Position numbers and translations under genes: made by a program
Notes under the pieces: generated by a model
Database searches by the model: none
Seen by the model: the letters and a program-made list of their open reading frames with translations, nothing else
Told to the model about the DNA's origin: nothing
NCBI GenBank assembly: GCA_037447605.1
Contig: CM074822.1
Location: 1,387,492 to 1,451,491, forward strand
Direction: 5' to 3'
Source: Zygnema circumcarinatum SAG 698-1b
Lineage: Eukaryota > Plantae > Zygnematophyceae
DNA: 64,000 bases
Shown: in pieces, positions 12,736 to 64,000 of the stretch
How the letters are laid out: each line of letters starts with the position of its first letter
Position numbering within the stretch: position 1 is the first letter of the stretch

Positions 12736-13612
12736 CTCTCCCTCTCCCCCTCCCCCTCTCTCTCGCTCTCTCAAACAATCACAACTTATTCTGTTGCAAT
12801 GTAGATCTCTGCAAGCCGCTCCTGCCGTGATGTATGAAGGGAGAGCGAGCGGCGGAGAGAGAGAGGGTAAGAGGGTGAGAGAGAAAAGTGAGAGGAAGGG
12901 AGAGGGAAGAGGTAGAGGTGGGGAAGTGGGAGAGGGAGTGGGATTTGGAGGGAGAAGGAGAAAGAAAGAGATAGAGGTGGATAGGGAGAGCTGGAGGGAG
13001 AGAGAGAGAAAGAGTGAGAGTCAGAGACGCCTTAAGTGATACCCTAAAATATTAGAACTTTAAATTTCTGAGCCCCCACTAGTGCTGCAGGCGGAGATCT
13101 TGAAGCAGGAGGTTCGCCAGTTGAGGGAAGCTCTCGAGAACGAGAAGCAGTATCTGATGGGGACTGCATCCGGTCTAGACTTACAGGTCACATTCTACAT
13201 TCCTTCTAATAATTAATAGATAAAACCGGATAATTCAATCGAAGCACAGGCCCTTCACTCACACCGAACAACACAACCATTACTGATTAATTTTCGCTAT
13301 AAAATTTTCTCCCCCACACAACACAAAGTAAAAACACCTGCTATCGCCCATCATATCAGGCCTATCCAGAACCCTCCAACTCGCACTCTCTCCCTCTCCC
13401 ACCATCTCAAAAGCTCACATTCCCCTCTACCGCTACCTCCTCCCCATTCGAGTCTCTGACTGTCTACCCCTCACATTCAAAGGCAGCCAATCAACACCCA
13501 CCAATTGGCAGCCTCCTCCTCTCCCATCTGCAGCCAGCATGCACCACACCAAGCAACAATTCTACGCCGTTCGATCTGCCACGTGGCCGCCTGATCTCTT
13601 CCAATCCCTTCC

Positions 13613-14370
13613 TCAGGCTGCGCTCGGCCAAGTGCTCTCAAAGTCCCAACTCAATATCTCGTGCTGTGCTGTCGCGCCCCCGGTCGCGGCGCTGAAACCG
13701 ACGTAAGCATTCGTCAGCCCCGCACATGCTGCGCACGTGATTGGCCGCAACACGCTGCAAAGCGCCGCCGAGTGCGTCAGCAGCGGGTTCGCGGGTTTGA
13801 CATCTCCGGCGTCATCTAGGTACACACTCCATAGTTTCAAGGCGCCGTCGTACTCAATCCAAGCATACTTCACGGTGGCAAAATCATCGAGAAGAGTTGT
13901 GGTTTGAAGCTTGGCAGTTCTCTTAAAGTTTTCACGCACACCCACGAAACGGCTGGCAGGCTCTCCAAGATCGACGTTTTGATAGGTATCGAAAGTAATT
14001 GCTGCACTCCCCACTGAATTTCTGAATGTAGAGTTGTACGTGTATCCAAGATTTCCACCACTTGATCGTCCGAAATAACCCAGCACTGCATTTGAAGTAA
14101 GAAGGAAAAATGTGAAACCATCGACGGTCCGTGCATTGCTGCTGGAAATTTTAAAGGAGAACTTCGTCCTGAATGAAGCCTCTTGGCATCCCCCAGTCGC
14201 ATTGTCTCGTAAAAGTTCGATTGGACTTTGATAGAGTCCGATTCCAGTAAGAATCTTGTTGTCACTTGTTAGTTGCAATCTCCACTGAACGAGCTTTGTT
14301 GAATAGCGACGGAGTATTTCACTTGCAGAAAAAAAGCCCGGGTAGGAGAAACTGGCCGGGGTGCTAGTTG
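13613..14370 (-). CDS. Terminal exon: legume-type (L-type) lectin domain
   Basis: FRTKFSFKI...VDGFTFFL...GGNLGY...ITFDTYQN...YAWIEYDG...YVGFSAATGG...HEILSWDF, then TGA. Acceptor gttcag| at 14371. Confidence 0.92.
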
Positions 14371-17300
14371 CTGAACACCACACAGAGAAACGGTGAAACT
14401 TAAATCAACGTGCAGTGCAGGAAGAAGATTGGGTCAGCATATGGTGCCATAGTTTTGCAGAAATAAAAACGACACTTGCAACCAGGCTTAACCACACTGA
14501 TGTATCGCGAAAGGTTAGCTACCGAGCACAAACTGTCCCAATTCTTTGGAAATTTTGGAAACCTCTCTCTCTCTCTCTCTCTTCGTTCCTTTCTTTCCAT
14601 TCGATTTTTTCCAATTTTCGCCACTCTCATCTCGCCCTCCATTCCTCTCTCGCCTTCCCTCCCTCCCATCCTCACTCCCTCTGCATAATTGCCAATAGGC
14701 CGCGCTTTGAGCAGCCAAGACATCCGCGTGACTACAAACTTTGCATTTGCTTGCAAAGAGCAAGCTCCCTCACATCCGCTTGACAGCAGGCAGGCACACA
14801 AAACATGGTGGGTTCAGCAAAGCCAAAGTGAAATCGCACGAATCGAAGTCATGACCGGCATCAAGAAAACTCCCACCGAGGACTTCCTGAATGCATCCAT
14901 CTGAAACAATCCAAAACATACCTAGAAATGCTCCATAAACCTTTACTTCGCATAAAGTGAAGTCGGGAAAACCCTGGGAGGAGCCACCCAAATGTATTTT
15001 CCGACCAGAGAGGAACATCTTTTGACGAAGGGGAAGCCATCGCTTGTGGGGCCGTACACAAAAACATTAGTGGGGTCGCACTCTGTGTTCCCATACATAC
15101 TGCCATCGTCACCAATCCACACCTGCACTCCATTCAACCGTTCTTGACCAACATCCGTTCTCCCATACAACAAAACAGTGTCCACCACTGCACTATGACG
15201 CAGATCCACCTTCCACCAAAAACCATATCCATTGTAGGAAGGAGTAATAATCGCGCATGAATCTTCTCCAGCATTTACTTTCCCATTGCCGTTGAAGCCG
15301 TCCACTGACCTATTAGCAGTCCAGTAATCTCCCGACTGATATGCGGGCATATAGAGAGCAAGATTGTCTGCGATCTCCAGTTGGAAGAATCACATACAAA
15401 AAAAAAAAAACAAAAGCATATATGAGTTTACATAATGGTGAAACAGAATTGCAAATTTTCATCCACAAAAATATGGTAATGACATTCCTATACTCAAAGA
15501 AAAGTATACTCCTCCAAATACACAACCGCTAATCGACAAGAACCATTCAGACTTAAATCTTCATCCGCCTCTTCGATTCTCAATCATCGTCATTGACCGA
15601 GCATAAAATCTGGAGCACAACTTAATAAAGATAAACATGACTTCGCCACAACACCGACGAATGTAACCTTTAGATTTCTTCAGGAGTGGGCCAAAAAAAA
15701 GTAGATTTCAACTTGCTAAAAAAATGCACCAAAGCAAACGACACAACCGAGGTGCAAGGTTTGAAGGAGAAGGTCGTACAGCCCGGCATGCATAGAACCT
15801 CTTTTGGAACAACGCATTTGACCCTCATTGAACACATTGCTACAAATGAAGTCATCTCGTCTTACCTCTCAGAATTCCAGGAGGTGGGCTCGGAGGTGGA
15901 GGTGGAGGAGATGGCGGGCTTGGAGGTTGTGGAGGTGCTGGCGGTGGCCTTGGTGGAGGTGGACCAAGTGCTACACAGCCGCACACGAGAAAATAAATAT
16001 CAAGATGTGGCTCTTTCCCGTTTTAGAAATAAGTTGATCGACAAGACTTTGAATTTAGCAAGGAAGAACTTGCAATAATCTGTAAAACCGCAAAAACGCC
16101 CGATACTGTGTGCGACGGACAAAACAAAAGAGAATTTCCACCCCTATCCCCATCGCTAGCAAAATAGAAGGAGAAAAGTCAAATCAATCAATCGTCCTCG
16201 GGCTAGATAGCCTTGACGAGTTTCTTTTAATAGTGACCGCATGATCGGATGTCGTCTATCATAATGATGAGTTCGGGATTTGTTTCGCCTGTCACCAACC
16301 GCTCTGGCCTACATTCGGTATTTAGATTGCTGTCACGTTCATTCGCCTTCACTTCGATGTTCTTTTGTTCTGTATAGGTCGCATTTGTCCGCGACAACTG
16401 CGAGGACGTGGATAGCAAAACACAGCTCTCAAGCCCCTCCCTTCCCCCTCTCCTCTCTCGCCTCCTCCTTGAACTTTCACTCGTTACCTCTCTTGTTGCC
16501 TCTCTCTCTCTTTCTACCTCGCACTCCCTCTTATTTTCACCTCTCCAGCCAATCACTCGTCTTGGCCGGGCTATAGGGCCGCGCTCCGCCCAGCCAACAC
16601 TCATGTTGCTTGAAAAGGACCAACCACTCACACCTCCGTTTCACAACGAGCAGACGCGCAGATAATCAATGGGAGCCCATTACATGCTCAGCGAGGTCAA
16701 AGAAAAAAGGGCGCACTGATCTAAGTCATAACCGGCTTCAAGAAAAGATACGCGCAACTAGTTCCTAAATGCATCCGTCGGAAACAATTCAAGACATACC
16801 TAGAAGTGTTCCATAAACCTTAACTTCGCATAGACTGAGGGGAGGACGTGGATGGTACACCCAAACGAAACGTCCGACCAGCGAGGAACACTTCTTGACG
16901 ACCGGGAAGCCATTGTTGAAGTAGTAGTTGTATACGAACACATTGGTGGGGTCGCATTCTGTGTTTCCTTCTCCATTCCACGTCTCATTGTTAGGACCAA
17001 TCCACGCCGTCACTCCATTGAAGAATTCTCCGGGGACATCTGTTCTCCCATACAACAAAACAGTGTCCACAACTGCACTACGAAGTAGATCCACCTTCCA
17101 CCAAGTTGGTGGCCCATATGTGCGCGCGCAAGAATATTCTCCATCATTTACTCTGTCAGTGCCGTTGTAGCCGTCCACAGCCCTATCAGCGGTCCAGTTC
17201 GAGAACGTGTACAACTGAAATGCGGGCTTATGGAGAGCCAGATTGTCTGCAATCTCCACATGAAAAAAAAAAAAAAAGGGCAGCAAGCAGAAGTATATTA

Positions 17301-20300
17301 AGAAACATAAATGTGATCTTTCATCCACAAAGACAAGATAGTGACATTCCCATACATAAGAGTGTAACTCATCCAAATACATAAGCCACTACTCGACACT
17401 AAATAGTCAGATATCGTCATTGACCGTGCACGAAATCTGGAGCACAATTAATAAGGATAAACTTGACTTCACCAGAACACCGATGAATGTAACCTTTAGA
17501 TTCCTTCAGGAGTGGGATAAGAAAATTGGGTTTCAACTTGATAAGGAAACGCTCTGACGAAAAAGACACAACCGAGGTGCAAGGTTTGAAGGAGAAGGTC
17601 GTACAGCGCGGCATGCATAGAACCTCTTTTGGAACAACGCATTTGACCCTCATTGAACACATTGCTACATTGGAAATCATCTCCTCTTACCTCTCAGAAT
17701 TCCAGGCGGTGGGCTCGGAGGTGGAGGTGGGCTTGGAGGAGGAGGTGGAGACGGAGGGATTGGAGGTGACGGCGGCGGAGGTGGAGGTGCTGCAAAGCCG
17801 CACACGAAGAACTAAGCATCAAGTCGTGGTTCCTATCCGCTTTAGAGAGTAGTTGGTCGATCTGACTTTGAGATGAGCAAGAAAACCCGCAATAAAATGA
17901 TAAACCACTAAAACAGTACGATCCTGTGTTCGACGGACAAAACGAACGAGAATGTCCATCCCCATCGCTGGCGGAAGTGCTCTGGCCAGAAAAGACCAGA
18001 ATTTGTTTTTCCTGTCATCAACCGCTCCGCCTTTACATTCTAGGTATTTAGATTTCTCTGCTTTAATCCTCCTTCTCTTCGATGCTCTCCTTGGATGCAT
18101 AGATTGAGTCTGCCCGCAGCAACTTCAAAGCACGTGCATACAAACACTTCTCACTCTCTCAAACTCGCCCTTCCGCCTCTCCTCTCTAAATCTATCCTTC
18201 CCTCCACTCTCTTCTCCTCTTTTCTCTTTCACTTTTTACCTCTCTTGTTGCGCCTCTCCCTCTATCTCTCATTGCCAGGCAACACTCGTCGTGTTGCTCG
18301 AAAAGGACCAACCTCTCCCACATCCGTTTCACAACGAGGACGCGCAGATGATCAAGGAAGACGATTCCACATTCAGCGATGAAGAAAAATGCAGAAAATG
18401 CAGCAGTCTGAAACAGTCCAAAACATACCTAAAGGGGTCCCATAAACCTTTACTTCGCATAAGTGAAGTCGGATTAAACCCTGGGAGGAGCCACCCAAAT
18501 GTATTTTCCGACCAGAGAGGAACATCTTTTGACGAGGGGGAAGCCATTGCTTGTGGGGCTGAACACAAAAACATTAGAGGGGTCGCACTCTGTGTTCGCA
18601 TACATACTGCCACTGTCACCAATCCACACCTGCACTCCATTCAACCGTTCTTGACCAACATCCGTTCTCCCATACAACAAAACAGTGTCCACCACTGCAC
18701 TATGACGCAGATCCACCATCCACCAAAATCCATATCCATTGTAGGAAGGAGTAATAATCGCGCATGAATCTTCTCCAGCATTTACTTTCCCATTGCCGTT
18801 GAAGCCGTCCACTGACCTATTAGCAGTCCAGTAATCTCCCGACTGATATGCGGGCATATAGAGAGCAAGATTGTCTGCGATCTCCAGTTGGAAGAATCAC
18901 ATACAAAAAAAAAACAAAAGCATATATGAGGTTACATTATGGTGAAACAGAAACGGAAATTTTCATCCACAAAAATATGATAATGACATTCCTATACTCA
19001 AAGAAAAGTATACTCCTCCAAATACACAACCGCTAATCGACAAGAACCATTCAGACTTAAATCTTCATCCGCCTCTTCGATTCTCAATCATCGTCATTGA
19101 CCGAGCATGAAATCTGGAGCACACCTTAATAAAGATAAACATGACTTCGCCACAACACCGACGAATGTAACCTTTAGATTTCTTCAGGAGTGGGCCAAAA
19201 AAAAGTAGATTTCAACTTGATAAAGAAATGCACCAAAGCAAACGACACAACCGAGGTGCAAGGTTTGAAGGAGAAGGTCGTACAGCGCGGCATGCATAGA
19301 ACCTCTTTTGGAACAACGCATCTGACCCTCATTGAACACATTGCTACATTGGAAGTCATCTCGTCTTACCTCTCAGAATTCCAGGAGGTGGGCTTGGAGG
19401 TGGAGGTGGAGGAGATGGCGGACTTGGAGGTTGTGGAGGTGCTGGCGGTGGCCTTGGTGGAGGTGGACCAAGTGCTGCACAGCCGAACACGAACAACTAA
19501 GTACAAAGACGTGGCTCTTTTCCGTATTAGAAATAAGTTGATCGACAAGACTTTGAATTTAGCAAGGAAGAACTTGCAATAATCTTTAAAACCGCAAAAA
19601 CGCACGATACTGTGTGCGACGGACAAAACAAAAGAGAATTTCCACCCCTATCCCCATCGCTAGCAAAATAGAAGGAGAAAAAACAAATCAATCAATCGTC
19701 CTCGGGCTACATAGCCTTGACGAGTTTCTTTTAATAGGTGACCGCATGATCGGATGTCGTCTATCATTATGATGAGTTCGGGATTTGTTTCGCCTGTCAC
19801 CAACCGCTCTGGCCTACATTCGGTATTTAGATTGCTGTCACGTTCATTCGCCTTCAGTTCGATGTTCTTTTGTTATGTATAGGTCGCATCTGTCCGCAGC
19901 AATTGCAAGGACGTGGATAGCAATACACAAGCCCTCCCTTCCCCCTCTCCTCTCTCGCCTCCTCCTTGAACTTCCACTCGTTACCTCTCATGTTGCCTCT
20001 TTCCCATTATCTCTCAGTCCCTGTCTTTCACCTCTCCAGCCAATCACTCGTCTTGGCCGGGCTATAGGGCCGCGCTCCGCCCAGCCAACACTCATGTTGC
20101 TTGAAAAGGACCAACCACTCACACCTCCGTTTCACAACGAGCAGACGCGCAGATAATCAATGGGAGCCCATTACATGCTCAGCGAGGTCAAAGAAAAAAG
20201 GGCGCACTGATCTAAGTCATAACCGGCTTCAAGAAAAGATACGCGCAACTAGTTCCTAAATGCATCCGTCGGAAACAATTCAAGACATACCTAGAAGTGT

Positions 20301-23300
20301 TCCATAAACCTTAACTTCGCATAGACTGAGGGGAGGACGTGGATGGTACACCCAAACGAAACGTCCGACCAGCGAGGAACACTTCTTGATGAAGGGGAAG
20401 CCATCGTCGACGTTAAATATGAACACATTGGTGGGGTCGCATTCTGTGTTTCCTTCTCCATTCCACGTCTCATTGTTAGGACCAATCCACACCGTCACTC
20501 TATTGAAGAGTCCTCTGGTGATATCTCCTATCCCATACAACAAAACAGTGTCCACAACTGCACTACGAAGTAGATCCACCTTCCACCAAGTTGGTGGCCC
20601 ATATGTGCGCGAGAAAGAATATTCTCCATCATTTGCTCTGTCAGTGCCGTTGTAGCCGTCCACAGCCCTATCAGCGGTCCAGTTCGAGAAGGTGTACAAC
20701 TGAAATGCGGGCTTATGGAGAGCCAGATTGTCTGCAATCTCCACATGAAAAAAAAAAAAAAAAAGGGCAGCAAGCAGAAGTACATTAAGAAACATAAATG
20801 TCCACTTTCATCCACAAAGACAAGATAGTGACATTCTCATACATAAGAGTGTAACTCATCCAAATACATAAGCCACTACTCGACACTAAATAGTCAGACA
20901 TCGTCATTGACCGAGCATGAAATCTGGAGCACAACTTAATAAGGATAACCATGACTTCGCCAGAACAAAGACGAATGGACCCTTCAGATTTCTTCAGGAG
21001 TGGGATAAGAACATTAGATTTCAAATTGATAAGGAAACTCCCTGAAGAAAACGACACAACCGAGGTGCAAGGTTTGAAGGAGAAGGTCGTATAGCGCGGC
21101 ATGCATAGAACCTCCTTTGGAACAACACACCTGACCCTCATTGAATACATTGCTACATTGCTATATTGCATTTCATCTGGTCCTCTTACCTCTCGGTGGA
21201 GGGCTTGGAGGTGGGTTTGGAGGAGATGGCGGTGGGTTGGGAGGTGGTGGTGGAATTGGCGGCGGCGGTGGGCTTGGCGGCGGTGGACCAAGTTCTGCAC
21301 AGCCGCACACGAAGAACTAAGCATCAAGTCGTGGTTCCTATCCGCTTTAGAGAGTAGTTGGTCGATCTGACTTTGAGATGAGCAAGAAAACCCGCAATAA
21401 AATGATAAACCACTAAAACAGTACGATCCTGTGTTCGACGGACAAAACGAACGAGAATGTCCATCCCCATCGCTGGCGGAAGTGCTCTGGCCAGAAAAGA
21501 CCAGAATTTGTTTTTCCTGTCATCAACCGCTCCGCCTTTACATTCTAGGTATTTAGATTTCTCTGCTTTAATCCTCCTTCTCTTCGATGCTCTCCTTGGA
21601 TGCATAGATTGAGTCTGCCCGCAGCAACTTCAAAGCACGTGCATACAAACACTTCTCACTCTCTCAAACTCGCCCTTCCGCCTCTCCTCTCTAAATCTAT
21701 CCTTCCCTCCACTCTCTTCTCCTCTTTTCTCTTTCACTTTTTACCTCTCTTGTTGCGCCTCTCCCTCTATCTCTCATTGCCAGGCAACACTCGTCGTGTT
21801 GCTCGAAAAGGACCAACCTCTCCCACATCCGTTTCACAACGAGGACGCGCAGATGATCAAGGAAGACGATTCCACATTCAGCGATGAAGAAAAATGCAGA
21901 AAATGCAGCAGTCTGAAACAGTCCAAAACATACCTAAAGGGGTCCCATAAACCTTTACTTCGCATAGAGTGAGGAAATTTGTTGTTGGAATGTACACCCA
22001 AACGAATCGTCCGACCAGCGAGGCACACCTCTTGACGAACGGAAAGGCCTTGCCAAATTTGTGAAACCGGTAAACGTTAGTGGGGTCGCACTCCGTGTTC
22101 CCAATTGCATTCCATGTGTCATTGTAAATTCCGATCCACACCTGCGCTTCATTCAACTGTTCTTGTAGGGAATCTGTTCTCCCATACAACAAAACAGTGT
22201 CCACAACTGCAGTACGAACTAAATCCACCTTCCACCACCTTTTATAATATGTGCTCGCGCACGTATCTTCTCCATAATCTGCTCTGCCATTGCCGTTGTA
22301 GCCGTCCACAGCCCTATCAGCGGTCCAGTTCAGGAAAGTGTTCTCCTGAAATGCGGGCTTATGGAGAGCCAGATTGTCTGCAATCTCCAGTTGNNNNNNN
22401 NNNCTTTCATCCACAAAGACAAGATAGTGACATTCTCATACATAAGAGTGTAACTCATCCAAATACATAAGCCACTACTCGACACTAAATAGTCAGACAT
22501 CGTCATTGACCGAGCATGAAATCTGGAGCACAACTTAATAAGGATAACCATGACTTCGCCAGAACAAAGACGAATGGACCCTTCAGATTTCTTCAGGAGT
22601 GGGATAAGAACATTAGATTTCAAATTGATAAGGAAACTCCCTGAAGAAAACGACACAACCGAGGTGCAAGGTTTGAAGGAGAAGGTCGTATAGCGCGGCA
22701 TGCATAGAACCTCCTTTGGAACAACACACCTGACCCTCATTGAATACATTGCTACATTGCTATATTGCATTTCATCTGGTCCTCTTACCTCTCGGTGGAG
22801 GGCTTGGAGGTGGGTTTGGAGGAGATGGCGGTGGGTTGGGAGGTGGTGGTGGAATTGGCGGCGGCGGTGGGCTTGGCGGCGGTGGACCAAGTTCTGCACA
22901 GCCGCACACGAAGAACTAAGCATCAAGTCGTGGTTCCTATCCGCTTTAGAGAGTAGTTGGTCGATCTGACTTTGAGATGAGCAAGAAAACCCGCAATAAA
23001 ATGATAAACCACTAAAACAGTACGATCCTGTGTTCGACGGACAAAACGAACGAGAATGTCCATCCCCATCGCTGGCGGAAGTGCTCTGGCCAGAAAAGAC
23101 CAGAATTTGTTTTTCCTGTCATCAACCGCTCCGCCTTTACATTCTAGGTATTTAGATTTCTCTGCTTTAATCCTCCTTCTCTTCGATGCTCTCCTTGGAT
23201 GCATAGATTGAGTCTGCCCGCAGCAACTTCAAAGCACGTGCATACAAACACTTCTCACTCTCTCAAACTCGCCCTTCCGCCTCTCCTCTCTAAATCTATC

Positions 23301-26300
23301 CTTCCCTCCACTCTCTTCTCCTCTTTTCTCTTTCACTTTTTACCTCTCTTGTTGCGCCTCTCCCTCTATCTCTCATTGCCAGGCAACACTCGTCGTGTTG
23401 CTCGAAAAGGACCAACCTCTCCCACATCCGTTTCACAACGAGGACGCGCAGATGATCAAGGAAGACGATTCCACATTCAGCGATGAAGAAAAATGCAGAA
23501 AATGCAGCAGTCTGAAACAGTCCAAAACATACCTAAAGGGGTCCCATAAACCTTTACTTCGCATAGAGTGAGGAAATTTGTTGTTGGAATGTACACCCAA
23601 ACGAATCGTCCGACCAGCGAGGCACACCTCTTGACGAACGGAAAGGCCTTGCCAAATTTGTGAAACCGGTAAACGTTAGTGGGGTCGCACTCCGTGTTCC
23701 CAATTGCATTCCATGTGTCATTGTAAATTCCGATCCACACCTGCGCTTCATTCAACTGTTCTTGTAGGGAATCTGTTCTCCCATACAACAAAACAGTGTC
23801 CACAACTGCAGTACGAACTAAATCCACCTTCCACCACCTTTTATAATATGTGCTCGCGCACGTATCTTCTCCATAATCTGCTCTGCCATTGCCGTTGTAG
23901 CCGTCCACAGCCCTATCAGCGGTCCAGTTCAGGAAAGTGTTCTCCTGAAATGCGGGCTTATGGAGAGCCAGATTGTCTGCAATCTCCAGTTGAAAAATAA
24001 TAAAATACTAACAAGCAGAAGTATATACAGTCATCTTAATGTGAAACATAATTGCAATTTTTCATCCACCAAAAACAAATATTCACGTCCTATGCATAAA
24101 GCTTAGAATAACTCATCCAAATACACAACTGCTCGACAAATACTAGTCAGACTTAACCATCCGAATATCTTTATCCGCCTGTTCGATTCTCAATCATTCT
24201 CATTGATAGAACATGAATTCTGAAAAACAATTTATGAAGGCTAAACATGACTTCGCTCGAACAACGACGAATGTAACCTTCATATTTCTCTAGGAATGTG
24301 ATCAGAAACTTAAATTTCAACTGGAAAAAGAAACGTTCGAAAGAGAAACACACAACCGAGGTGCATAGTTTGAAGGAGAAGGTCCTATAGTGCGACATAT
24401 GTGGTCTTTTGCATCAACGTGGCTGACCCCGGTTGAATTCATTGCTACCAATAAAATTATCTCGTCCTCTCACCTCTCGGAGGTGGAGATGGCGGGCTTG
24501 GAGGTGGCGGCGGTGGGCTTGGCGGAGGTGGACCAAGTGCTGCACAGCCGCACACGAAGAACTGAGTATCAAGACGTAGGTCTTTTCCGTTTTAGAAAGA
24601 AGTTGATTGACAAGACTTAGAATTAAGCAGGAAAAACCTGCAATAATCTGCAAAACCGCAAAAACATACGATCCTGTGCGTGACAGACAAAAGGAAAAAA
24701 AAATTCCCCTCCCATCCCCATCGCTGGTAAAGATGCTAAGGCCAGAAAATTTCAAAATTTGTTCCTCCTGTCAACAACCGCTCTCACCTCCTCCTTGAAC
24801 TTCCACTCGTTACCTCTCATGTTGCCTCTTTCCCATTATCTCTCAGTCCCTGTCTTTCACCTCTCCAGCCAATCACTCGCTGCACAGTCGTGGACGGGAT
24901 ATGAGGCCGTGCTCAGCCCAGCCAACACTCGAGTTCCTCAAAAAGGACCAACCGCTTACACATCCGTTTCACAACGAGCAGACGCGCAGATAATCAATGG
25001 GAGTCGATTCCACATTCATTGAGGTCAAAGAAAACAAGGCGTACTGTTCTAAGTCATAACCGGCATCACGAAAAAACACACGCAACGAGGAGTTCCTAAA
25101 TTCACCCGTCTGAAGCAATCCAACACATACCTAGAGGTGTTCCATAAACCTTCACTTCGCATAAAGGGAGGTAGGTGAAGGTTGGAAGGTACACCCAAAC
25201 GAAACGTCCGACAACGGAACACCTCTTGACGAACGGGACGCCAATGTTTGTGGCGTTGAGCACGTTAGTGGGGTCGCACTCTGTATTCCCTATTCCTTTC
25301 CACGTGCCATTGTTAAAACCGATCCACACCGTCACTCCATACAAGAAATGTTGGTAGTAATCTTTCGTCCCATACACCAAAACAGTGTCCACAACTGCAC
25401 TACGAACTAAATCCACCTTCCACCAAATTGGAGGCCCATCATCTAAGGTAGTCATCGCGCATGTATATGTACTGAAGTAGCCGAGGCCTTCGTCGCCGTC
25501 CACAGCTTTATCAGCTGTGTAAAGGGAATAAAAATTGTTCACCTGAAATGAAGGCTTATGGAGGGCCAGATTCTCTGCAAACTCCAGTTGAATAACAATT
25601 ACATACAAACACACGATTTCACTCATGTGAGGGACACATGGGGAAGATACATCTCAAACATGATAAACACGCACGCATTGAATGTGATTCCTATGAACGC
25701 ATTTACAGTACCAACCGTCTCCTGTCGCTCATTATGATCCCCATTGCCTCAATTCATTCTCTTGCAATGGCCCTCTTAGTTTTTTTTTCTTTCAAACGAC
25801 CAAAATCCCGCACTTTTTTGTCTCTCCCTCCTATTCTCCTGATTCTCTTACGCCCACCACGCCATTTTCAACTCTCATTGATCCTTTTCTTAATTAATCT
25901 TCTCGGTTCTCTCTTTTCTCTTACTTATTTCGTTTCAACCCAAACGATTCACTCTTTACATCTTCTCCATTGAATGACACCCTATCCATTTTTTCCTCAC
26001 TTTTGTGCTCAACCACCCGTTTTTCTCTTTCTCTCTCCTGTGATCTGCTCTCTCCTTTTCTTTCCCAAGCCTTAATCACTTTTTCCTCCTCTCTCCCCCC
26101 CCACAAAATATATTGACGTTCTAATGGCATAGAAATTAGAATAACTCATCCAAATACACAACAACTGCTCGACAAAAAATGGCCCGACTTAACCATCCAA
26201 ACATCTTCATCCGCCTCTTCTATTCTCAATCATCGTCAACGATAGAGCATCAAATCTGGAGCACATCTTAAGAAGTATAAACATGATTTCGCTAGAACAC

Positions 26301-29300
26301 CGACGAACATACCCTTTATACTTCTTCAGGACTGGGATAGTAAATGATATTTCAACTTGATAAGGAAACGCGCCTTAGCAAAAGGCACAACCAAGATGCA
26401 CGGTTTGAAGGAGAAGGTCGTGCAGCGCGGTATGCATAGAACCTCCATTGGGAAAACGCATCTGACCCTCATTGAATCCATTGCTACAAATGGAGTCATC
26501 TCGTCCTCTTACCTCTCGGAACTGGAGATGGAGGGCTTGGAGGTGGGGCAAGTCCTGCACAGCCGTACAAGAAGAAGTATCAGGCGTGGTTCCTTTCCGT
26601 TTTAAACAGTAGTTGATCAAGAAGCCTCTGAATTAAGCATGAAAACACCTCCAATTACATGATAAACCACAAAACGTACAATCCTGTGTTCGACGGACAA
26701 AACAAAAGAAAATTTCCAAACCCATCGCTAGCAAAAATGCTAAGGCCAGAAAAACTCAGAATTTGTTTCTCCAATCATCAACCGCTCTGCCTTTACAGTC
26801 CAGGTATTTAATATCTCTCCATTAATCCTCCTCTTCGATGCTCTCCTTGGATGCATAAAGTTCAAACTTCAACTTCAAAGCACGTCGATTCTCCCTTCCC
26901 CCTCTCCTCTCTAAATCTATCCTTGTCCTGTTTTATCTTTCACTCTTTACCTCGCCTGTCGCGCCTCTCCCGCTAACTCTCACTCCCAGCCAACACTCGT
27001 GTTGCTCAAAAAGGACCAACCACTCACACATCCGTTTCACAACGTGCAGATGCGCTGATAATCAATGGGAGCCCATTTCACGCTCAGCAAGGTCAAAGGA
27101 AAATAGACGCACTGATCTAAGTCATAACCGGCATCAAGAAAACGTGAACCGAGGATTTCCTGAATGCATCCATCTGAAACAATCCAAAGCTTACCGATAA
27201 ATGCTCCATAAACCTTCACTTCGCACAGATCGAGCCAATTATAGGAGTCGGTTACTCGGTACACCCAAACGTAACGTCCGACAAGGTCGGAACACCTCTT
27301 GACGAACGGGAAGCTATTGTTCATGTTTATTGTTAACTCGAAAGTGTTCCAGGGTTCGCACTCTGTGTTCCCTACTCCATTCCACGTTTCATTGTTAATT
27401 CCGATCGTCACCTTCACTACATTCGATTGCCGTTCAGTCAAGATGGACGATTGACCCACATAAATCAAAACTGTGTCCACAAGTGCACTACGAACTAAAT
27501 CCACCTTCCACCAAGTTGGTGGTAGCCCATGAGTTAAAGTGCAAGACTGTCCATTGCCGTCCACAGCCCAATCGGGGTGATCATATTTGTTTGATCCAGC
27601 CAGAAATGCGGGCTTATGGAGAGCCAGATTTTCTGCAATCTCCAGTTGAAAAACAATTAGATACCAAAAAGCAGAATTATATATGCGGTCATCTTATTGT
27701 GGAACGTAAATGCAATTTTTCATCCACAAAAATAATATAATGACATTCCTATTCATGTGTGTAACTCATCCAAATACACAACTACTCGACAAAACTTAAC
27801 AGAACAAACACCTTTATCTGCCCCTTCAATTCTCAATCATCGTCATTGGCCGAGCATAAAATCTGGAGCACAACTTAATAACGATAAACATGACTTTGCC
27901 ACGATTGTAATATTTAGATTTCTTTAGGATGGGATAAGATAACTAAATTTCAACTGAATTAAACGCTCTGAAACAAAAGATAGAACCGAGGTGGAAGGTT
28001 TGAAGGAAGGTCGCATAGAGCGGCATCCATAGTGTGATGGTTAGTGATGCTGCAGGTTGTACTGACGTGTGTACGGAGGTTGCATGGGCATGTGTACGGA
28101 CATGTGTACGGATGAAAGAGGATCATTTGTGTGAGAGTATTCGGGAATGTACGAGGAGGACGCAAAGAGGCAGATGAAGCATCACAGGAAGATGAAGAGT
28201 TCAGGAAGGAGAATTCTAGAAGCAGAGACTGAGAGTAGAAAGAAGAGCAGCCAGAGAGCAAGCATAGAAGGAAGGAAGAAGGCAGAAGGAGTGAAGAGCA
28301 GAAAAGCTGAGCAGCAGAGGAAGAGAGAGAGAGAAGAATGAAGAGAAATGTATGAAGGCTTTTTATGAAATAAAGAAAGTGTTATGGAAATTTCCTGATG
28401 TCTTGTGAATGATCTTGATGGGACTGAGAGGTGTGTCCATCGTATGAATGTTGTAAGTGGAAATGTTTTCTTTGTCACATAGAACCTCTTTTGGACATCG
28501 CATCTGACCCTGATTGAATACATTGCTACATTGCTATATTGCATTTCATCTCGCCCTCTTACCTCTCGGTGGAGGGCTGGAGGTGGACGTGATGGCGGTG
28601 GCCTTGGAGGTGGTGGTGGCGGTGGGCTTGGCGGAGGTGGACCAAGTGCTGCACAGCCGTACACGAAGGACTAAGTATCTTGGTTGCTTTCCGTCTTTAG
28701 AGAGTAGTTGATTGTTCTTAATCTAAGTCATAACCGGCACCTAAAAAAGGAACGTACTACGAAATGTTACTGAAGCCATCCGTGGGGATTAATGCAAGAC
28801 ATACCTAAAAATGTTCCATGAACCTTTACTTCGCAAAGAGTGAGAACAGTATAGATTGGAAGGTACACCCAAACGAAACGTCCAACCAGCGAGGAACACC
28901 TCTTGACGAACGGGAAGCCATCGCTTGTGGGGCCGTACACAAAAACATTAGCGGGGTCGCACTCTGTGCTCCCTGTTCCATTCCAAGAGTAAGAGGGGAG
29001 GGGAGGGGAGGGAGGAAGGAAGGGAGGGAGGGGAGAGAGTAAGAGGCATTGGCATTGTAAAGTCCAATCCATACCTGCACTCCATTCAACCGTCTTTGGG
29101 CGGCATCTGTTCTCCCATACAATGCAACAGTGTCCACAACTGCACTACGACCTAAATCCACCTTCCACCAAATTGGTGGCCCAATATCAGTGGTAGTGCT
29201 CGCGCATGTATCTTCTCCAGCATCTGCTCTGCCATTGCCGTTGTAGCCGTCAACAGCCCTATCAGCGGTCCAATTCAAGTAACTGCTCGCCTGAAATGCG

Positions 29301-30781
29301 GGTTTATTGAGAGCCAGATTCTCTGCAATCTCCGGTTGAAAAACAATAACATACAAACACACGATTTCACTTATGTGAGGGACGACTGGGGGAGATACAA
29401 ATCAGACATGATAACCACACACGCATTGAATGTGATGCCAATGTAACGCATTTACAGTACCAACCATCTCCTGTCCACCCTCTTATAATCCCCACTGCCT
29501 CAATTCATTCTCATCCTTTGCAATGGCTCTCTTAGTCCATTTTCCTTGCTTACTACGTCTAAACTCCCGCCCTTCCCTGTCTCTACCTTCTATTCTCCTG
29601 ATTCTCTTACGCCCACCGCCATTTTCCTCTCTCACTGATCATTTTCTTAATTAATCTTCTCGGTTCACTATTTTCTCTTTCTTATTTCGTTTGGCCCCTA
29701 ACGATCTGTTCACATTTTATCACCTTCTCCATTGAATGACACCCTATCCAAATATTCCTCACTTTTGTCCACAACCACTCGTTTTTACCTCAACAGTGTT
29801 CTGCTCTCTCCTTTCTCTCCCAAGCCTTACTCACTTCATCCTCTTCTCTCCACCTTCCTCTCCAGTTTCTTCCATGCTCTACCTTTCCCCTCCCGTCTTC
29901 CCTCCCCCCTTGCCCTTCCCCTTGCCCTTGTCCTCCTCTACATATCCTCCCCTCCCCCGATGCCCTACAACCTTGCCCTCCCCCACTGCGCTTGCCCTCT
30001 CCCCATGCCCTCCCCCCTGCCCTTGACTTTCCCCCCTTGTCCTTCCAACCCCCCTTGCCACCCCACATTGCCTTCCCCCTCCCCTTCTCCTTCCCCTTGC
30101 CCCTGCACTCCCCCCTTGCCCTCCCACCTTGTCCTTACTCCCTGCCCTTGCCCTCCTCCCTATGTCCTCCCCTCCCCCCATGCCCTCCCCCGTTGCCCTC
30201 AGCCCTGGCCCTCTCCCCCTGCACTCACCCGAAAGCCCTTAGCCTCCCCCCCTTGTCCTCCCTTCCCCCTCTGGCCTCCCACCTTCATCACTCCCTGCCC
30301 TTGCGCCCTTGCCCTCACGCCCTTGTCCTCCCCTCCCCTCTGCCCTCCCCCCTTTCCCCCTCCCCCCTTGCCATCCCCCCCTTGCCCTCCCCCCCTTCCT
30401 TCCCCCCTTTCCCCCCTGCTATCCACCCCCTGTCGTCCACCTCTTGCCCTCCCCCCCGCCCTCCCCCTTTGTCCTTCCACCTTGACCTCCTCCTTGCCCC
30501 TGCCCACCCCCCTACCCCTCCCCCCCTTGCCCTCCCCCCCTGCCCTCCCCCCCTTCCCCCTCACCTCCTGCCCCCATCCCCCTCGCACTACCCCCCTTCC
30601 CCTTCCCCCCCTGCCCTCCCCCTCCTTTCCCTCCNNNNNNNNNNTGGCCTCCCCCTTCTGCCCTCCCCTCCCCCCCTCCCCTCCCCCCTGGCCCTCCCCT
30701 CCCCCCCTTCTCACCTTCCGCTTTGCAGCATCCCACAACGAGGAGGACGAGTGCGACCCATCCGACCCATTGCCGGCCCAT
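13613..30781 (-). CDS. Multi-exon secreted chimeric lectin: signal peptide - (F-type lectin - Ser/Pro-rich spacer)x8 - F-type lectin - L-type lectin; 19 coding exons, ~1,850 aa if lesions are repaired
   Basis: Manual splice reconstruction: all donors are G|gt and all acceptors are yag| in phase 1, so frames join (AE-E-NLAL; FL-A-LGPPP; LR-D-NLAL; FL-A-TSTP). Four exons carry frame-breaking lesions. Confidence 0.85.
14922..15367 (-). CDS. F-type lectin exon A; 1-nt deletion near the 3' end
   Basis: DNLAL..PAYQ...SVDG...CAIIT...WWKVDL...YGRTDVGQERLNG...TECDP...KRCSSLVG. Length is 446 bp, so LCEVKVYG falls in another frame. Confidence 0.85.
15866..15970 (-). CDS. Ser/Pro-rich spacer exon A
   Basis: 105 bp, tag|...|gtaag: [34 protein letters not shown]. 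Confidence 0.85.
16800..17246 (-). CDS. F-type lectin exon B (intact)
   Basis: 447 bp, open: NLALHKPAFQ...RAVDG...CARTYG...GRTDVPGEFFN...LCEVKVYGTLL. Confidence 0.9.
17691..17789 (-). CDS. Ser/Pro-rich spacer exon B
   Basis: 99 bp, cag|...|gtaag: [32 protein letters not shown]. Confidence 0.85.
18429..18874 (-). CDS. F-type lectin exon C (TAA plus 1-nt deletion near the 3' end)
   Basis: Near-identical to exon A. Reads WVAPPRV-TAA-SDFT and has lost one t before tgcgaa; length 446 bp. Confidence 0.85.
19370..19474 (-). CDS. Ser/Pro-rich spacer exon C
   Basis: 105 bp, paralog of spacer A with the same splice sites. Confidence 0.85.
20291..20731 (-). CDS. F-type lectin exon D (intact)
   Basis: 441 bp, open. 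Paralog of B, with the loop changed to GIGDITRGLFN. Confidence 0.9.
21190..21294 (-). CDS. Ser/Pro-rich spacer exon D
   Basis: 105 bp: [34 protein letters not shown]. Confidence 0.85.
21934..22377 (-). CDS. F-type lectin exon E (intact)
   Basis: 444 bp, open: CASTYYKRWWKVDL...GRTDSLQEQLN...LTLCEVKVYG. Confidence 0.9.
22789..22893 (-). CDS. Ser/Pro-rich spacer exon E (copy of D)
   Basis: Appears identical to 21190-21294 at an offset of 1599 bp. Confidence 0.8.
23533..23976 (-). CDS. F-type lectin exon F (copy of E)
   Basis: Appears identical to 21934-22377 at an offset of 1599 bp. Confidence 0.85.
24474..24539 (-). CDS. Ser/Pro-rich spacer exon F
   Basis: 66 bp, cag|...|gtgag: [21 protein letters not shown]. 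Confidence 0.85.
25131..25574 (-). CDS. F-type lectin exon G (intact)
   Basis: 444 bp, open: NLALHKPSFQ...KAVDG...CAMTT...GTKDYYQHFLY...LPLCEVKVYG. Confidence 0.9.
26513..26554 (-). CDS. Ser/Pro-rich spacer exon G
   Basis: 42 bp, cag|...|gtaag: [13 protein letters not shown]. Confidence 0.8.
27195..27632 (-). CDS. F-type lectin exon H (intact, most divergent)
   Basis: 438 bp, open: NLALHKPAFLAGSNKYDHPDWAVDG...CTLTH...WWKVDL...LDLCEVKVYGAFI|gtaag. Confidence 0.88.
28563..28648 (-). CDS. Ser/Pro-rich spacer exon H (1-nt deletion)
   Basis: 86 bp. Reads ccagccct where the paralogs have ccaagccct. Confidence 0.8.
28805..29322 (-). CDS. F-type lectin exon I, disrupted by a 50-bp insertion
   Basis: 518 bp. 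Removing 50 bp between the repeats agagtaagag (28986 and 29036) gives an open 468-bp exon containing GRTDAAQRRLN. Confidence 0.85.
29880..30714. repeat. C-rich (G-rich on the sense strand) low-complexity tract within intron 1
   Basis: (ccct/cccttgc)n with an N gap at 30635-30644. Confidence 0.85.
30715..30781 (-). CDS. First exon: signal peptide of the lectin gene
   Basis: ATG at 30781: MGRQWVGWVALVLLVVGCCKAE, then G|gtgag. It has a basic n-region, a hydrophobic core and a C-K-A cleavage-like site, and its phase 1 matches the downstream acceptors. Confidence 0.75.
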
Positions 30782-31676
30782 TGCGCACCGAAACCTCTAC
30801 TGCCCTCGTCTCTGAACTCTACTGACTGACTAACCAGCTCTTCCTCTCTCACATGCTTCCTTTTCTAGCTTACCTCCATGTGACGTCACGTTCGGAGTCC
30901 AGTTGGCATTCGGATACGGTTAAAAGTGACGTCGGATGGGCTCGTAAGGCTCGTACGATTCGTATGTCGTTTTTTGTGTTTGGCACGTGGCGGGCTGCCC
31001 GCTGCGCCGCGGTGGTTTTATTGGTCCTGCGGGCTTCTAATGGCACTTACGACGAAAAAAGTCGTCGTTTCTCTGGCAAGGCATCTATTTTTGTCTTTCA
31101 GTATTACTGACGACATGCGTTTCGTCAACTTTAATCCAGAACGAGTAATTAATAACCGTCAGATCCTTCCTCAGAATTGTACTTAGTTCAAGTTCACGTC
31201 TTTTTGTGACGCTTATCGTAAGATTTTGCTAAGTTTGACATGCCCTATGTATGTAAGTACAGCTCGTACGGAACGACACCTACAGTACTTGCTCCAGCCG
31301 AATGGCGTACGGATGGCTGTTAATTTTTGTGGTTTTAACCCCACCTCCCCCAGGTGCACCGAACTGTGAGACTGGCGCACGGTTTTCGAGGGCATCTTTG
31401 TCACTTCATGCTTCACACCTCCCCCAGTTGCCCCGAACTGTTAAACAGGCGTAGGAAAAAAGTGTTTTTTGTCGTTTTGTGCGTCTCACCTCCCCTTTTT
31501 GTCGTTTCTTCAGTCACCAACGCACCTGCCCGTTTTTACCGCCCAATGGAATAACCCAATTTTAGGAATAATATCGATCCGAGGCTGGACCAATCTCCGC
31601 ACCAATCAGACAGCGCGCAGCGCGTCTTGGACTGGCTCTCGACAGTCGGGTCGCGACAAAAAGCCGCGAACAGCAA

Positions 31677-63800: not shown

Positions 63801-64000
63801 CCTCACTCCCTCTCCCCCTCCCCCTCCCCCCACACCCACCCCCTCCCTCTCGCATACCCCTCCCGCTCCCCCTCCCCCTCCCTTCCCCTTCCTCCCCTCC
63901 CCTCCCCCCTCCCCTTCCCTCTCCCTCCCCCTCCCCCTCCCCCTCCCCCATCCCCCTCTCCCGTCCCTCCCCCTCCCCCTCCCCTCCCTCTCCCCCTCCC
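60880..64000. repeat. C-rich (CCCCT/CCCT)n satellite with ~0.9-1 kb higher-order repeats
   Basis: The marker cacacccaccccctccctctcgcatacccctcccg recurs at ~61937, ~62843 and ~63830. Runs off the window end. Confidence 0.9.

What the first reader, a model, noticed from the sequence alone, without database searches (positions are those of the whole stretch)
14922..29322. Hypervariable sugar-binding loops across the nine F-lectin modules while framework and introns stay conserved
Established: the F-type fucose-binding motif is H-x26-R-x-D-x4-R/K. Seen: the RxD loop reads GRTDAAQRRL (I), VGQSSILTERQ (H), GTKDYYQHFL (G), GRTDSLQEQL (E/F), GIGDITRGLF (D), GRTDVGQERL (A/C) and GRTDVPGEFF (B). The usual CSHT His is replaced in every copy (CAST, CTLT, CAMT, FSRT, CAIIT, CART). 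The framework words NLAL.KP, AVDG, WWKVDL, TECDP and LCEVKV are constant, and the intron block gaggtg..ggtttgaagga..aggtcg recurs in all eight units. B and D have near-identical flanks but differ sharply in this loop. Inference: diversifying selection has given one protein a panel of glycan specificities, resembling a CDR repertoire.
Basis: partly seen in the sequence, partly recalled or inferred. Interest (0 to 1): 0.78.

Follow-up and report, generated by a model that had tools for sequence, protein, structure and literature searches.

The report
Variable-loop F-lectin exon array, alga
A green-algal gene strings eight (not nine) fucolectin-type modules whose surface loops differ far more than their cores or introns, but the tests run here do not show that natural selection drove the differences, and variable loops of this kind are already known from animal F-type lectins.

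Summary
On the minus strand lies one gene: a signal-peptide exon, F-type-lectin-fold exons each followed by a short Pro-rich exon (all phase 1-1), and a legume-lectin exon. Modules E and F are one copy. The 1589 bases on each side of the gap are identical and flush with it, which marks an unmerged contig overlap, so there are eight modules.

All quoted loop strings, framework words and the missing His are correct. No module keeps the full fucose triad. The three that keep RxDx4R (I, C, A) are the three with frame-breaking lesions. One linker exon is also broken.

Loops diverge 2-3.5 times faster than introns and silent framework sites. However, a model with a fast class at omega=1 fits better, and omega is then 1.24 (not significant). 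Loop third positions are as diverged as first and second positions. The one loop I place on the far face (an inferred placement) is also variable, and modules are recombination mosaics.

Only the youngest intact pair, B/D, hints at selection. Loop diversity is real; adaptive diversification is plausible but unproven. "CDR" loops and diversifying tandem F-lectin repeats are already described (eel, oyster bindin). Expression is untested.

The parts
30715..30781 (-). Exon 1: start codon plus 22-residue hydrophobic signal-peptide-like leader, 67 nt, ends in phase 1 at a GAAG|gtgaga donor
   Evidence: Sequence read; frame seen. No signal-peptide predictor was run.
28805..29322 (-). F-lectin exon I (518 nt). 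Keeps RxDx4R. Broken by a 50-nt CT-rich microsatellite-like insertion at 28995-29044 flanked by a 10-nt direct repeat
28563..28648 (-). Pro-rich linker exon I-H, 86 nt, one base short of frame near its 3' end
27195..27632 (-). F-lectin exon H (438 nt, intact). The most divergent module; no triad residue is left
26513..26554 (-). Pro-rich linker exon H-G (42 nt, phase 1-1)
25131..25574 (-). F-lectin exon G (444 nt, intact). His, Arg79 and Arg86 equivalents are all replaced (M, T, F)
24474..24539 (-). Pro-rich linker exon G-E (66 nt)
23533..23976 (-). F-lectin exon E (444 nt, intact). Modelled by AlphaFold2
22404..23992 (.). Right-hand copy of the 1589-nt stretch that is identical to 20805-22393 and abuts the assembly gap 22394-22403. 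Taken as an unmerged contig overlap, so 'F' (21934-22377) is the same module as E
   Evidence: 0 mismatches in 1589
21190..21294 (-). Pro-rich linker exon E-D (105 nt)
20291..20731 (-). F-lectin exon D (441 nt, intact frame). It has lost the first conserved Cys (Phe instead) and Arg79, and differs from B mainly in two ligand-face loops
19370..19474 (-). Pro-rich linker exon D-C (105 nt)
18429..18874 (-). F-lectin exon C (446 nt). A -1 frameshift in the last loop leads to a stop. Its 3' end and the following intron are E-like (1 mismatch in 639 nt of intron)
17691..17789 (-). Pro-rich linker exon C-B (99 nt)
16800..17246 (-). F-lectin exon B (447 nt, intact)
15866..15970 (-). Pro-rich linker exon B-A (105 nt, tag acceptor)
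14922..15367 (-). F-lectin exon A (446 nt). It has the same -1 frameshift as C, with a stop 20 nt before the donor
13613..14370 (-). Terminal exon: legume (L-type) lectin domain, phase-1 acceptor gttcag|, ends at a stop codon
   Evidence: Pfam PF00139 1.1e-32; acceptor read

Best explanation
The stretch is the body of one secreted-type gene of a streptophyte green alga. The organism is taken from earlier notes and was not checked here.

The gene reads as follows:
- a signal-peptide exon;
- eight F-type-lectin-fold exons;
- a short Pro-rich, extensin-like exon after each of the first seven lectin exons;
- a terminal legume-lectin exon.

Every internal exon is phase 1-1. The array grew by unequal crossing-over. 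The latest event copied a 3.5-kb two-module block, giving D-C and B-A. The modules have since exchanged segments, so each is a mosaic.

The beta-sandwich core is kept by purifying selection. It comprises NLAL, the AVDG cation motif, WWKVDL, four Cys and LCEVKV. The surface loops turn over 2-4 times faster than introns or silent core sites. This holds for the loops inferred to lie on the ligand face and for the long loop inferred to lie on the far face. The turnover comes from in-frame indels, segment exchange and point changes, with nonsynonymous and synonymous change about equal.

The outcome is eight different ligand faces, none with the canonical His-Arg-Arg fucose site.

Shown here:
- the gene anatomy;
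- the assembly duplicate;
- the rate contrast between loops, core and introns;
- the mosaicism;
- the loss of the triad.

Inferred:
- that the protein is made;
- that its modules bind anything;
- that the loop diversity is useful.
For: - Anatomy and splice phases.
- E = F overlap.
- F-lectin identity.
- Framework omega: 0.57 by GY94 and 0.48 by counting (below 1 at p = 1.4e-4). Loop omega: 1.07 and 0.88.
- The fast class with omega = 1 and rate x3.9 (lnL -2257.55) beats M2a (-2266.22). Freeing omega gives 1.24, not significant.
- Loop codon positions are equally diverged, and loop four-fold sites differ at 0.32-0.40 against 0.22 in the framework.
- The inferred far-face loop has dN* 1.12 against 1.0-1.6 for ligand-face loops.
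- Mosaicism: I and A share a 38-nt loop segment exactly (p <= 5e-4); E and B/D share 41 nt. Nearest neighbours switch along the exon. E and C exons differ by 27%, yet the following introns differ by 1 in 639.
- Long-term coding constraint: the five intact exons have no stop, although random substitution at half the observed divergence leaves only 7-17% of copies stop-free per lineage. Apart from the lesions listed, the many loop length differences all preserve the frame.
Against: - With introns or framework silent sites as the neutral yardstick, loop nonsynonymous divergence is about twofold higher. The uniform-dS site test is strongly positive. Real positive selection could therefore be hidden by multi-nucleotide changes and by alignment uncertainty in the loops.
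- B/D differences are concentrated in ligand-face loops. They fall 13:7:3 by codon position, with none of the changes in or next to the RxD loop at a third position. The frameshifted pair A/C of the same duplication is scattered (Fisher p = 3.5e-4).
- Four frame-breaking lesions, the Cys-to-Phe change in D and the absence of any close protein in the 1.84-billion-protein library (best module 72 bits against 169-287 for self) leave room for a dying gene.
- The placement of loops on the ligand or far face rests on strand alternation in the model, not on coordinates.
Confidence: 0.55

Rival explanations
1. Diversifying (positive) selection on the ligand-face loops has given one multivalent lectin a panel of different glycan specificities, as in oyster sperm bindin or eel fucolectin isoforms.
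For: - M2a over M1a: 2dlnL 40.3, with omega 3.2 at 27% of sites. 22 of the 27 high-posterior sites lie in ligand-face loops, including the His52 and Arg86 equivalents.
- Loops are 2-3.5 times more diverged than introns.
- B/D pair: N:S 20:3, omega 2.0, and 18 of 23 changes in ligand-face loops.
- No third-position change in or next to the RxD loop of B/D. This argues against a copied patch from a diverged donor, and no donor exists in the window.
- Precedent in the family: PMC5712786.
Against: - Omega is about 1 once the silent rate may vary or when the loops get their own tree.
- Third positions and four-fold sites in loops are also elevated.
- The inferred far-face loop is variable too.
- Recombination, shown, is known to give false positives in site tests.
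- Equally dense ungapped substitution clusters occur in introns of the same duplicate.
- B/D omega is not significantly above 1 on its own: 20:3 observed against about 17.7:5.3 expected from the site counts. No formal test was run.
- No module has the fucose triad, so binding itself is unproven.
- Three modules are broken.
Confidence: 0.25
2. The array is a decaying, no longer expressed gene. Loop variability and loss of the triad simply reflect relaxed constraint after the gene died, and the conserved introns reflect the youth of the duplications.
For: - Four frame-breaking lesions, in exons I, C, A and in the I-H linker.
- The first lesion sits right behind the signal peptide.
- D has lost a disulfide Cys.
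- A/C evolve at omega 0.85 with scattered changes, including core residues.
- Exon divergence in the young duplicates equals intron divergence: 5.2% against 3-5%.
- Framework omega is high for a folded domain (0.5-0.6).
- No matching protein in the large libraries.
Against: - Framework omega is significantly below 1.
- The five lectin exons, six linker exons, the leader and the legume-lectin exon are open, and every splice site is canonical.
- Keeping the frames open at this divergence is unlikely by chance.
- Loop length differences preserve the frame.
- Three of the four lesions are single-base length differences at short runs, in a draft with 12 gaps in 64 kb, so they may be sequencing errors.
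- All broken exons are phase 1-1 and could be skipped without loss of frame.
Confidence: 0.12
3. The pattern is largely an assembly artefact. Collapsed or chimeric consensus in a tandem repeat makes some stretches identical and others falsely divergent.
For: One artefact is demonstrated: the E/F overlap at the gap. The window has 12 gaps. Stretches of 364-639 nt with 0-1 mismatches lie next to 25%-diverged patches.
Against: The deep modules (I, H, G, E, B/D, A/C) differ throughout by 20-40%, with in-frame indels and conserved core motifs. A mis-assembly would not produce this. The divergent loops keep open frames.
Confidence: 0.03

Closest known systems
Oyster (Crassostrea gigas) sperm bindin F-lectin repeats (reviewed in PMC5712786)
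   Same: Both have one to several tandem F-type lectin repeats in one gene, with the repeats diversified around the binding pocket. In both, some repeats lack the His-Arg-Arg triad, and recombination between repeats occurs. Both have purine- or pyrimidine-rich simple repeats in the introns (here). In oyster the repeat number is varied by splicing; here every exon is phase 1-1, so skipping is possible.
   Different: In bindin each repeat is split by an intron, and positive selection was shown at eight sites. Here each module is one exon, selection is not shown (omega about 1-1.2 when the silent rate varies), and no splicing data exist. The spacers are Pro-rich extensin-like exons, a legume lectin caps the chain, and the organism is an alga.
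Eel fucolectins (AAA, 1K12; Anguilla japonica eFL-1 to -7) and striped bass FBP32 (3CQO)
   Same: Same fold and core motifs. The loops around the pocket are called CDR1-5 in the literature, and isoform variability sits in them (PMC5712786).
   Different: The eel isoforms keep His52 and the CDR4 sequence strictly, with variation limited to CDR1 and CDR2. Here the His is absent everywhere and CDR4 is among the most variable loops. Sequence identity is only about 26-30% in the Foldseek alignments.
Animal multi-F-lectin proteins (Xenopus tropicalis 'fucolectin' LOC100491211, Branchiostoma, marsupial and fish proteins)
   Same: Long tandem chains of F-lectin domains (up to 13 matched stretches). 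These are the best-scoring proteins in the 1.84-billion-protein library. Many of their domains also lack the His: 58% of 575 domains, with the full triad in only 36%.
   Different: Per-domain similarity is low (72 bits or less, 37% identity or less, against 169-287 bits for self). None of the 40 proteins with the best single-domain scores is Pro-rich or has more than three PPP runs. Arg79 is kept in 91% of their domains but in only 5 of the 8 modules here.
Chimeric extensin-lectin wall proteins of plants and green algae
   Same: Lectin heads joined by stiff Ser-Pro-rich spacers behind a signal peptide. Earlier notes of this scan report neighbouring genes with three, four and six F-lectin modules plus a legume lectin.
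   Different: The plant examples use hevein domains. I did not find F-lectin plus legume-lectin chains described in the papers searched. PMC5712786 states that higher plants have no F-lectin domains and that green algae do.

Membership tests
F-type lectin domain (FTLD / FTP, fucolectin fold) | Sequence similarity to solved F-type lectins | tested here: met
   phmmer of module G against PDB: FBP32 3e-18, eel agglutinin 3e-9, S. pneumoniae fucolectin-related protein 2e-3. Pfam PF22633/PF00754 near threshold for all nine exons.
F-type lectin domain (FTLD / FTP, fucolectin fold) | F-type beta-jellyroll fold | tested here: met
   AlphaFold2 model of module E: pLDDT 86.5, pTM 0.85. The ten best Foldseek PDB matches are all F-lectin domains, TM 0.72-0.78, ahead of CBM32/discoidin domains.
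F-type lectin domain (FTLD / FTP, fucolectin fold) | Fucose-binding motif: His, then about 24-26 residues, then R-x-D-x4-R/K | tested here: not met
   The His52 equivalent is S, L, M, R or I in all modules. RxDx4R is kept only in I, C and A, which are the three broken exons. E and B keep Arg79 only. H, G and D keep none. The modules therefore have the fold but are not predicted to be canonical fucose binders.
F-type lectin domain (FTLD / FTP, fucolectin fold) | Cation-binding motif (small hydrophobic residues, then DG) | tested here: met
   AVDG in I, H, G, E, D and B; SVDG in C and A.
F-type lectin domain (FTLD / FTP, fucolectin fold) | Two conserved disulfides (Cys50-Cys146 and Cys108-Cys124 of eel agglutinin) | tested here: met
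   Four Cys at the aligned places in seven of eight modules. D has Phe for the first. Pairing itself is inferred.
F-type lectin domain (FTLD / FTP, fucolectin fold) | Binds L-fucose or fucosylated glycans | not testable with these tools
   Needs recombinant protein.
Bindin-type diversifying F-lectin repeat gene | Positive selection at sites around the binding pocket | tested here: inconclusive
   M2a over M1a gives 2dlnL 40.3, but omega is 1.24 (not significant) with a fast-rate class. Loop omega is 0.88-1.07. The B/D pair is suggestive.
Bindin-type diversifying F-lectin repeat gene | Recombination between repeats | tested here: met
   Shared tracts I-A and E-B/D, p <= 1e-3. Nearest neighbours switch along the exon. 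Exon and intron histories disagree.
Bindin-type diversifying F-lectin repeat gene | Repeat number varied by alternative splicing | not testable with these tools
   All exons are phase 1-1 with lengths divisible by three, lesions aside, so skipping is possible. No transcript data could be reached.
Legume (L-type) lectin domain | Pfam PF00139 above the gathering score | tested here: met
   113.9 bits against a cut-off of 26.3, E = 1.1e-32.

The most novel reading that the evidence does not exclude
The locus, together with the three similar genes that earlier notes place within about 160 kb, could be a cassette system. In it, symmetric phase-1 lectin exons are reshuffled by recombination within exons. 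Loop sets from different parents would be combined on a constant core, with broken modules that keep the ancestral RxDx4R loop serving as donors. The exons would then be chosen by exon skipping. This would give an alga a combinatorial repertoire of wall or surface lectins for mate, self or microbe recognition, an algal counterpart of oyster bindin.
Probability: 0.12. Interest if true: 0.7.

Novelty: new variant of a known kind. Interest (0 to 1): 0.36.

Why it matters
F-type lectins are best known from animal immunity and fertilisation, where tandem repeats with diversified pocket loops widen ligand range. Higher plants are reported to lack the domain.

A streptophyte alga carries clusters of long F-lectin chains on extensin-like spacers, capped by a plant-type legume lectin. 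Every module has abandoned the fucose triad. This suggests that the fold was used for other wall or surface ligands near the origin of land plants.

The locus is also a clear example of how a standard site test for positive selection can be satisfied by fast, recombining, indel-rich loops without any excess of amino-acid change. That is a useful caution for the rest of this scan.

Tried and rejected
- **Rfam scan of 13500-31000** at E <= 0.1: no match.
- **Consensus fold of the conserved intron block:** weak (-17.5 kcal/mol, covariation term unfavourable). An intronic RNA gene is not supported.
- **Word-indexed protein search** with the B open frame (197 aa): no hit at 1e-10. This is uninformative for longer relatives.
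- **Megablast against plasmids:** no match. In hindsight this was an irrelevant collection.
- **First AlphaFold2 run** with only the five window modules: pLDDT 66, N-terminal third unreliable. It was replaced by a run with 24 library proteins added.
- **Donor search for D's divergent loops within the window:** none within 3 mismatches, or within 12 substitutions. Intra-array conversion does not explain them.
- **Literature search for CDR3/CDR5 residue ranges:** nothing found. The placement of loops on the ligand or far face was therefore inferred from strand alternation in the model, anchored on CDR1, CDR4 and the termini.
- **Substitution clustering as evidence for selection in B/D:** rejected, because equally dense ungapped clusters occur in the introns of the same duplicate.
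- **Spliced protein:** All searches, alignments and folds were exon by exon, by reference.
- **Handling of the lesions in the codon analyses:** the 32-nt frameshifted segment of A and C was masked and the 50-nt insertion of I was left out. No residues were supplied at the breaks.
Full report
**Gap and module count**

The scan's program asked that the gap at 22394-22403 be tested first. The 1589 bases immediately left of it (20805-22393) are identical, with 0 mismatches, to the 1589 bases immediately right of it (22404-23992). Other paralogous stretches in the array differ by 3-9% or more. A perfect repeat whose two copies both end exactly at a scaffold gap is the signature of two overlapping contigs set end to end instead of merged. 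I therefore treat E (23976-23533) and F (22377-21934) as one module. The array has eight modules and seven real inter-module intervals. The gap itself lies in an intron, 16 nt upstream of the F acceptor, so no reading frame crosses it.

**Gene anatomy**

Everything is on the minus strand.
- Each lectin module is a single exon that starts after (t/c)tgcag or tcgcag and ends at G|gta(t/a)g. It begins and ends in phase 1.
- Between each pair of modules lies a 42-105-nt exon. It encodes a Pro-rich spacer of the SPPPP type and is again phase 1-1.
- Upstream, at 30781-30715, an ATG opens a 22-residue hydrophobic leader that ends in phase 1 at a gtgaga donor.
- Downstream, after exon A, a phase-1 acceptor at 14370 opens a legume-lectin domain that runs to a stop at 13613 (Pfam PF00139, 1.1e-32).

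The stretch thus reads as one gene: leader, eight F-lectin modules on seven extensin-like spacers, and a legume lectin. Earlier notes of this scan say the genome is a green alga close to land plants. They also place similar genes with three, four and six modules within about 160 kb. I could not read those genes.

All searches were exon by exon, by reference.

**Lesions**

There are four frame-breaking lesions.
- Exon I carries a 50-nt CT-rich, microsatellite-like insertion (28995-29044) bounded by a 10-nt direct repeat.
- Exons C and A share a 32-nt segment in the last loop, where 30, 33 or similar is expected. This gives a -1 frameshift and early stops.
- The I-H spacer exon is 86 nt, one base short.

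Three of the four are single-base length differences at short runs, in a draft with 12 gaps in 64 kb. Sequencing error cannot be excluded. All four sit in exons that could be skipped without loss of frame.

**What the modules are**

- Module G matches striped bass FBP32 (3e-18), eel agglutinin (3e-9) and the pneumococcal fucolectin-related protein in the PDB.
- With 24 library proteins added to the alignment, module E folds with pLDDT 86.5. Its ten best structural matches are all F-type lectin domains, TM 0.72-0.78, ahead of CBM32 and discoidin domains.
- The cation motif (A/S)VDG is present in all modules. The four Cys are present in seven; D has Phe for the first.
- The sugar motif is not kept. 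The residue aligned to His52 is S (I, E), L (H), M (G), R (B, D) or I (A, C).
- RxDx4R survives only in I, C and A, which are exactly the three broken exons. E and B keep Arg79 only. H, G and D keep none.

Loss of the His is common in the family. Among 575 domains of the 150 best library proteins, 42% have His, 91% Arg79, 75% Arg/Lys86 and 36% the full triad. Loss of Arg79 is unusual.

**Relatives**

A profile search of 1.84 billion representative proteins found 3843 proteins. The best are animal multi-F-lectin chains: Xenopus tropicalis with 13 matched stretches, Branchiostoma, a fish, marsupials and unnamed metagenome proteins. The best single module scores 72 bits (37% identity or less), against 169-287 bits for the window's own modules. 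Neither this gene nor a close paralogue is therefore in that collection. The word-indexed search found nothing either. Expression is untested.

**How the array grew**

- D-C and B-A form a 3.5-kb two-module duplicate that is 95-100% identical.
- The homology ends inside the 3' end of exons C and A. From there on, C continues like E: the introns after E and C differ by 1 in 639, although the two exons differ by 27%.
- This fits an unequal cross-over between the 3' ends of an A-type and the E exon.
- Within exons, I and A share a 38-nt loop segment exactly (33 consecutive polymorphic sites, permutation p <= 5e-4). E and B/D share 41 nt (p <= 1e-3).
- Nearest neighbours switch along every module. 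I, for example, is E-like at its start and A-like later.

The modules are recombination mosaics.

**Is loop variability more than neutral?**

I aligned the eight modules by codon. The frameshifted segment of A and C was masked and the insertion in I was left out. The columns were split into six loops and a framework.

*Rate contrast.* Tree length per nucleotide site:

| Partition | Tree length per site |
|---|---|
| Framework, codon positions 1+2 | 0.54 |
| Framework, position 3 | 0.59 |
| First intron (without the unalignable I copy) | 0.61 |
| Second intron | 0.91 |
| Loops, positions 1+2 | 2.05 |
| Loops, position 3 | 1.73 |

The first 135 nt of the intron after each spacer exon are even more conserved than silent framework sites.

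*Ratio of amino-acid to silent change.*
- GY94 gives omega 0.57 for the framework and 1.07 for the loops.
- Parsimony counting gives 0.48 (below 1 at p = 1.4e-4) and 0.88. No single loop exceeds 1.01.
- That model assumes one silent rate. A model with the same number of parameters, whose third class has omega = 1 and a 3.9-fold higher overall rate, fits 8.7 lnL units better. Freeing omega in that class gives 1.24 with 2dlnL = 1.1.
- In keeping with this, loop codon positions are equally diverged (0.39, 0.41, 0.40).
- Four-fold sites differ at 0.22 in the framework and at 0.40 in loops. Within loops the value is 0.32 where the first two bases agree and 0.56 where they differ.

An excess that affects silent positions as much as replacement positions points to three things: multi-base events, indels with uncertain homology, and segment exchange. 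It does not point to selection on single amino-acid changes. Recombination, shown above, is a further known cause of false positives.

*Which face varies.* Using strand alternation in the model, anchored on CDR1, CDR4 and the termini, the long loop after the VWIG strand lies on the far side from the pocket. It is nevertheless variable, with dN* 1.12 against 1.0-1.6 for the ligand-face loops. This placement is inferred, not measured.

**The one hint of selection**

The duplication that made D/B also made C/A, so the two pairs have the same age.
- The intact pair B/D differs at 23 sites. Of these, 18 lie in ligand-face loops (binomial p = 2.5e-4). They fall 13:7:3 by codon position, with N:S = 20:3 (omega 2.0).
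- No third-position change occurs among the 12 changes in and next to the RxD loop.
- The frameshifted pair A/C differs at 16 scattered sites, which include core residues (Fisher p = 3.5e-4 between the pairs).
- No donor for D's loops exists in the window.

This is what adaptive change in a working module next to neutral drift in a dead one would look like. There are three limits on it:
- The N:S excess is not significant by itself.
- D has also lost a structural Cys.
- Ungapped clusters of 10 substitutions in 45 nt occur in the introns of the same duplicate, so patchiness is a general property of the locus.

**Not a long-dead pseudogene**

Random substitution at half the observed pairwise divergence leaves a module stop-free only 7-17% of the time. 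Yet five modules, six spacers, the leader and the legume-lectin exon are open, all splice sites are canonical, and the many loop length differences all preserve the frame. The frames were therefore maintained through most of the divergence, and the lesions, if real, are recent.

**Comparison with what is known**

The review PMC5712786 shows that:
- the five pocket loops of F-lectins are already called CDR1-5;
- eel isoforms vary in CDR1 and CDR2 while keeping His52 and CDR4;
- green algae have F-lectin domains and higher plants do not.

Three things differ here: the host lineage, the one-exon modules on extensin-like spacers with a legume-lectin cap, and the complete loss of the His with CDR4 among the most variable loops. 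I found this architecture in no paper searched and in no library protein.

**Verdict**

The loop diversity and its contrast with core and introns are solid. I rate the finding a new variant of a known kind, of moderate interest.

Noticed in passing
window 20805-22393 and 22404-23992: Perfect 1589-nt duplicate flush with both sides of the 10-N gap. Probably an unmerged contig overlap, which inflates the module count and any repeat statistics for this locus.
   Followed up: yes
window 15694-15865, 17519-17690, 19198-19369, 21017-21189, 26340-26512 (minus strand): The first ~135 nt of the intron after each Pro-rich exon are more conserved between units than silent sites of the lectin exons. There is no Rfam match and no covariation support for a structure. 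This may be a splicing signal for the tiny exon or a homogenised stretch; it remains unexplained.
   Followed up: partly
window 28995-29044: 50-nt (CCCTC)n-like insertion with a 10-nt direct repeat inside lectin exon I. It resembles, in the opposite orientation, the simple repeats that fill the first intron (29900-30708).
   Followed up: partly
window 17790-18428 vs 21295-21933: The introns following exons C and E differ by 1 in 639 nt, while the exons differ by 27% and the next spacer exons by about a third. This marks an unequal cross-over breakpoint inside the 3' end of the exon.
   Followed up: yes
window 29732-30829 (+ strand ORF of 365 aa, Pro-rich): The long Pro-rich open frame on the plus strand is the complement of the G-rich simple repeat in intron 1 of the lectin gene. 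It is probably not a gene.
   Followed up: no
window 60001-64000: GC content rises to 66-75% with strongly negative GC skew, unlike the rest of the window. Not examined.
   Followed up: no
window, whole: Twelve runs of N in 64 kb (one of 100, the rest of 10). The assembly is draft quality, which bears on every single-base lesion called here.
   Followed up: partly
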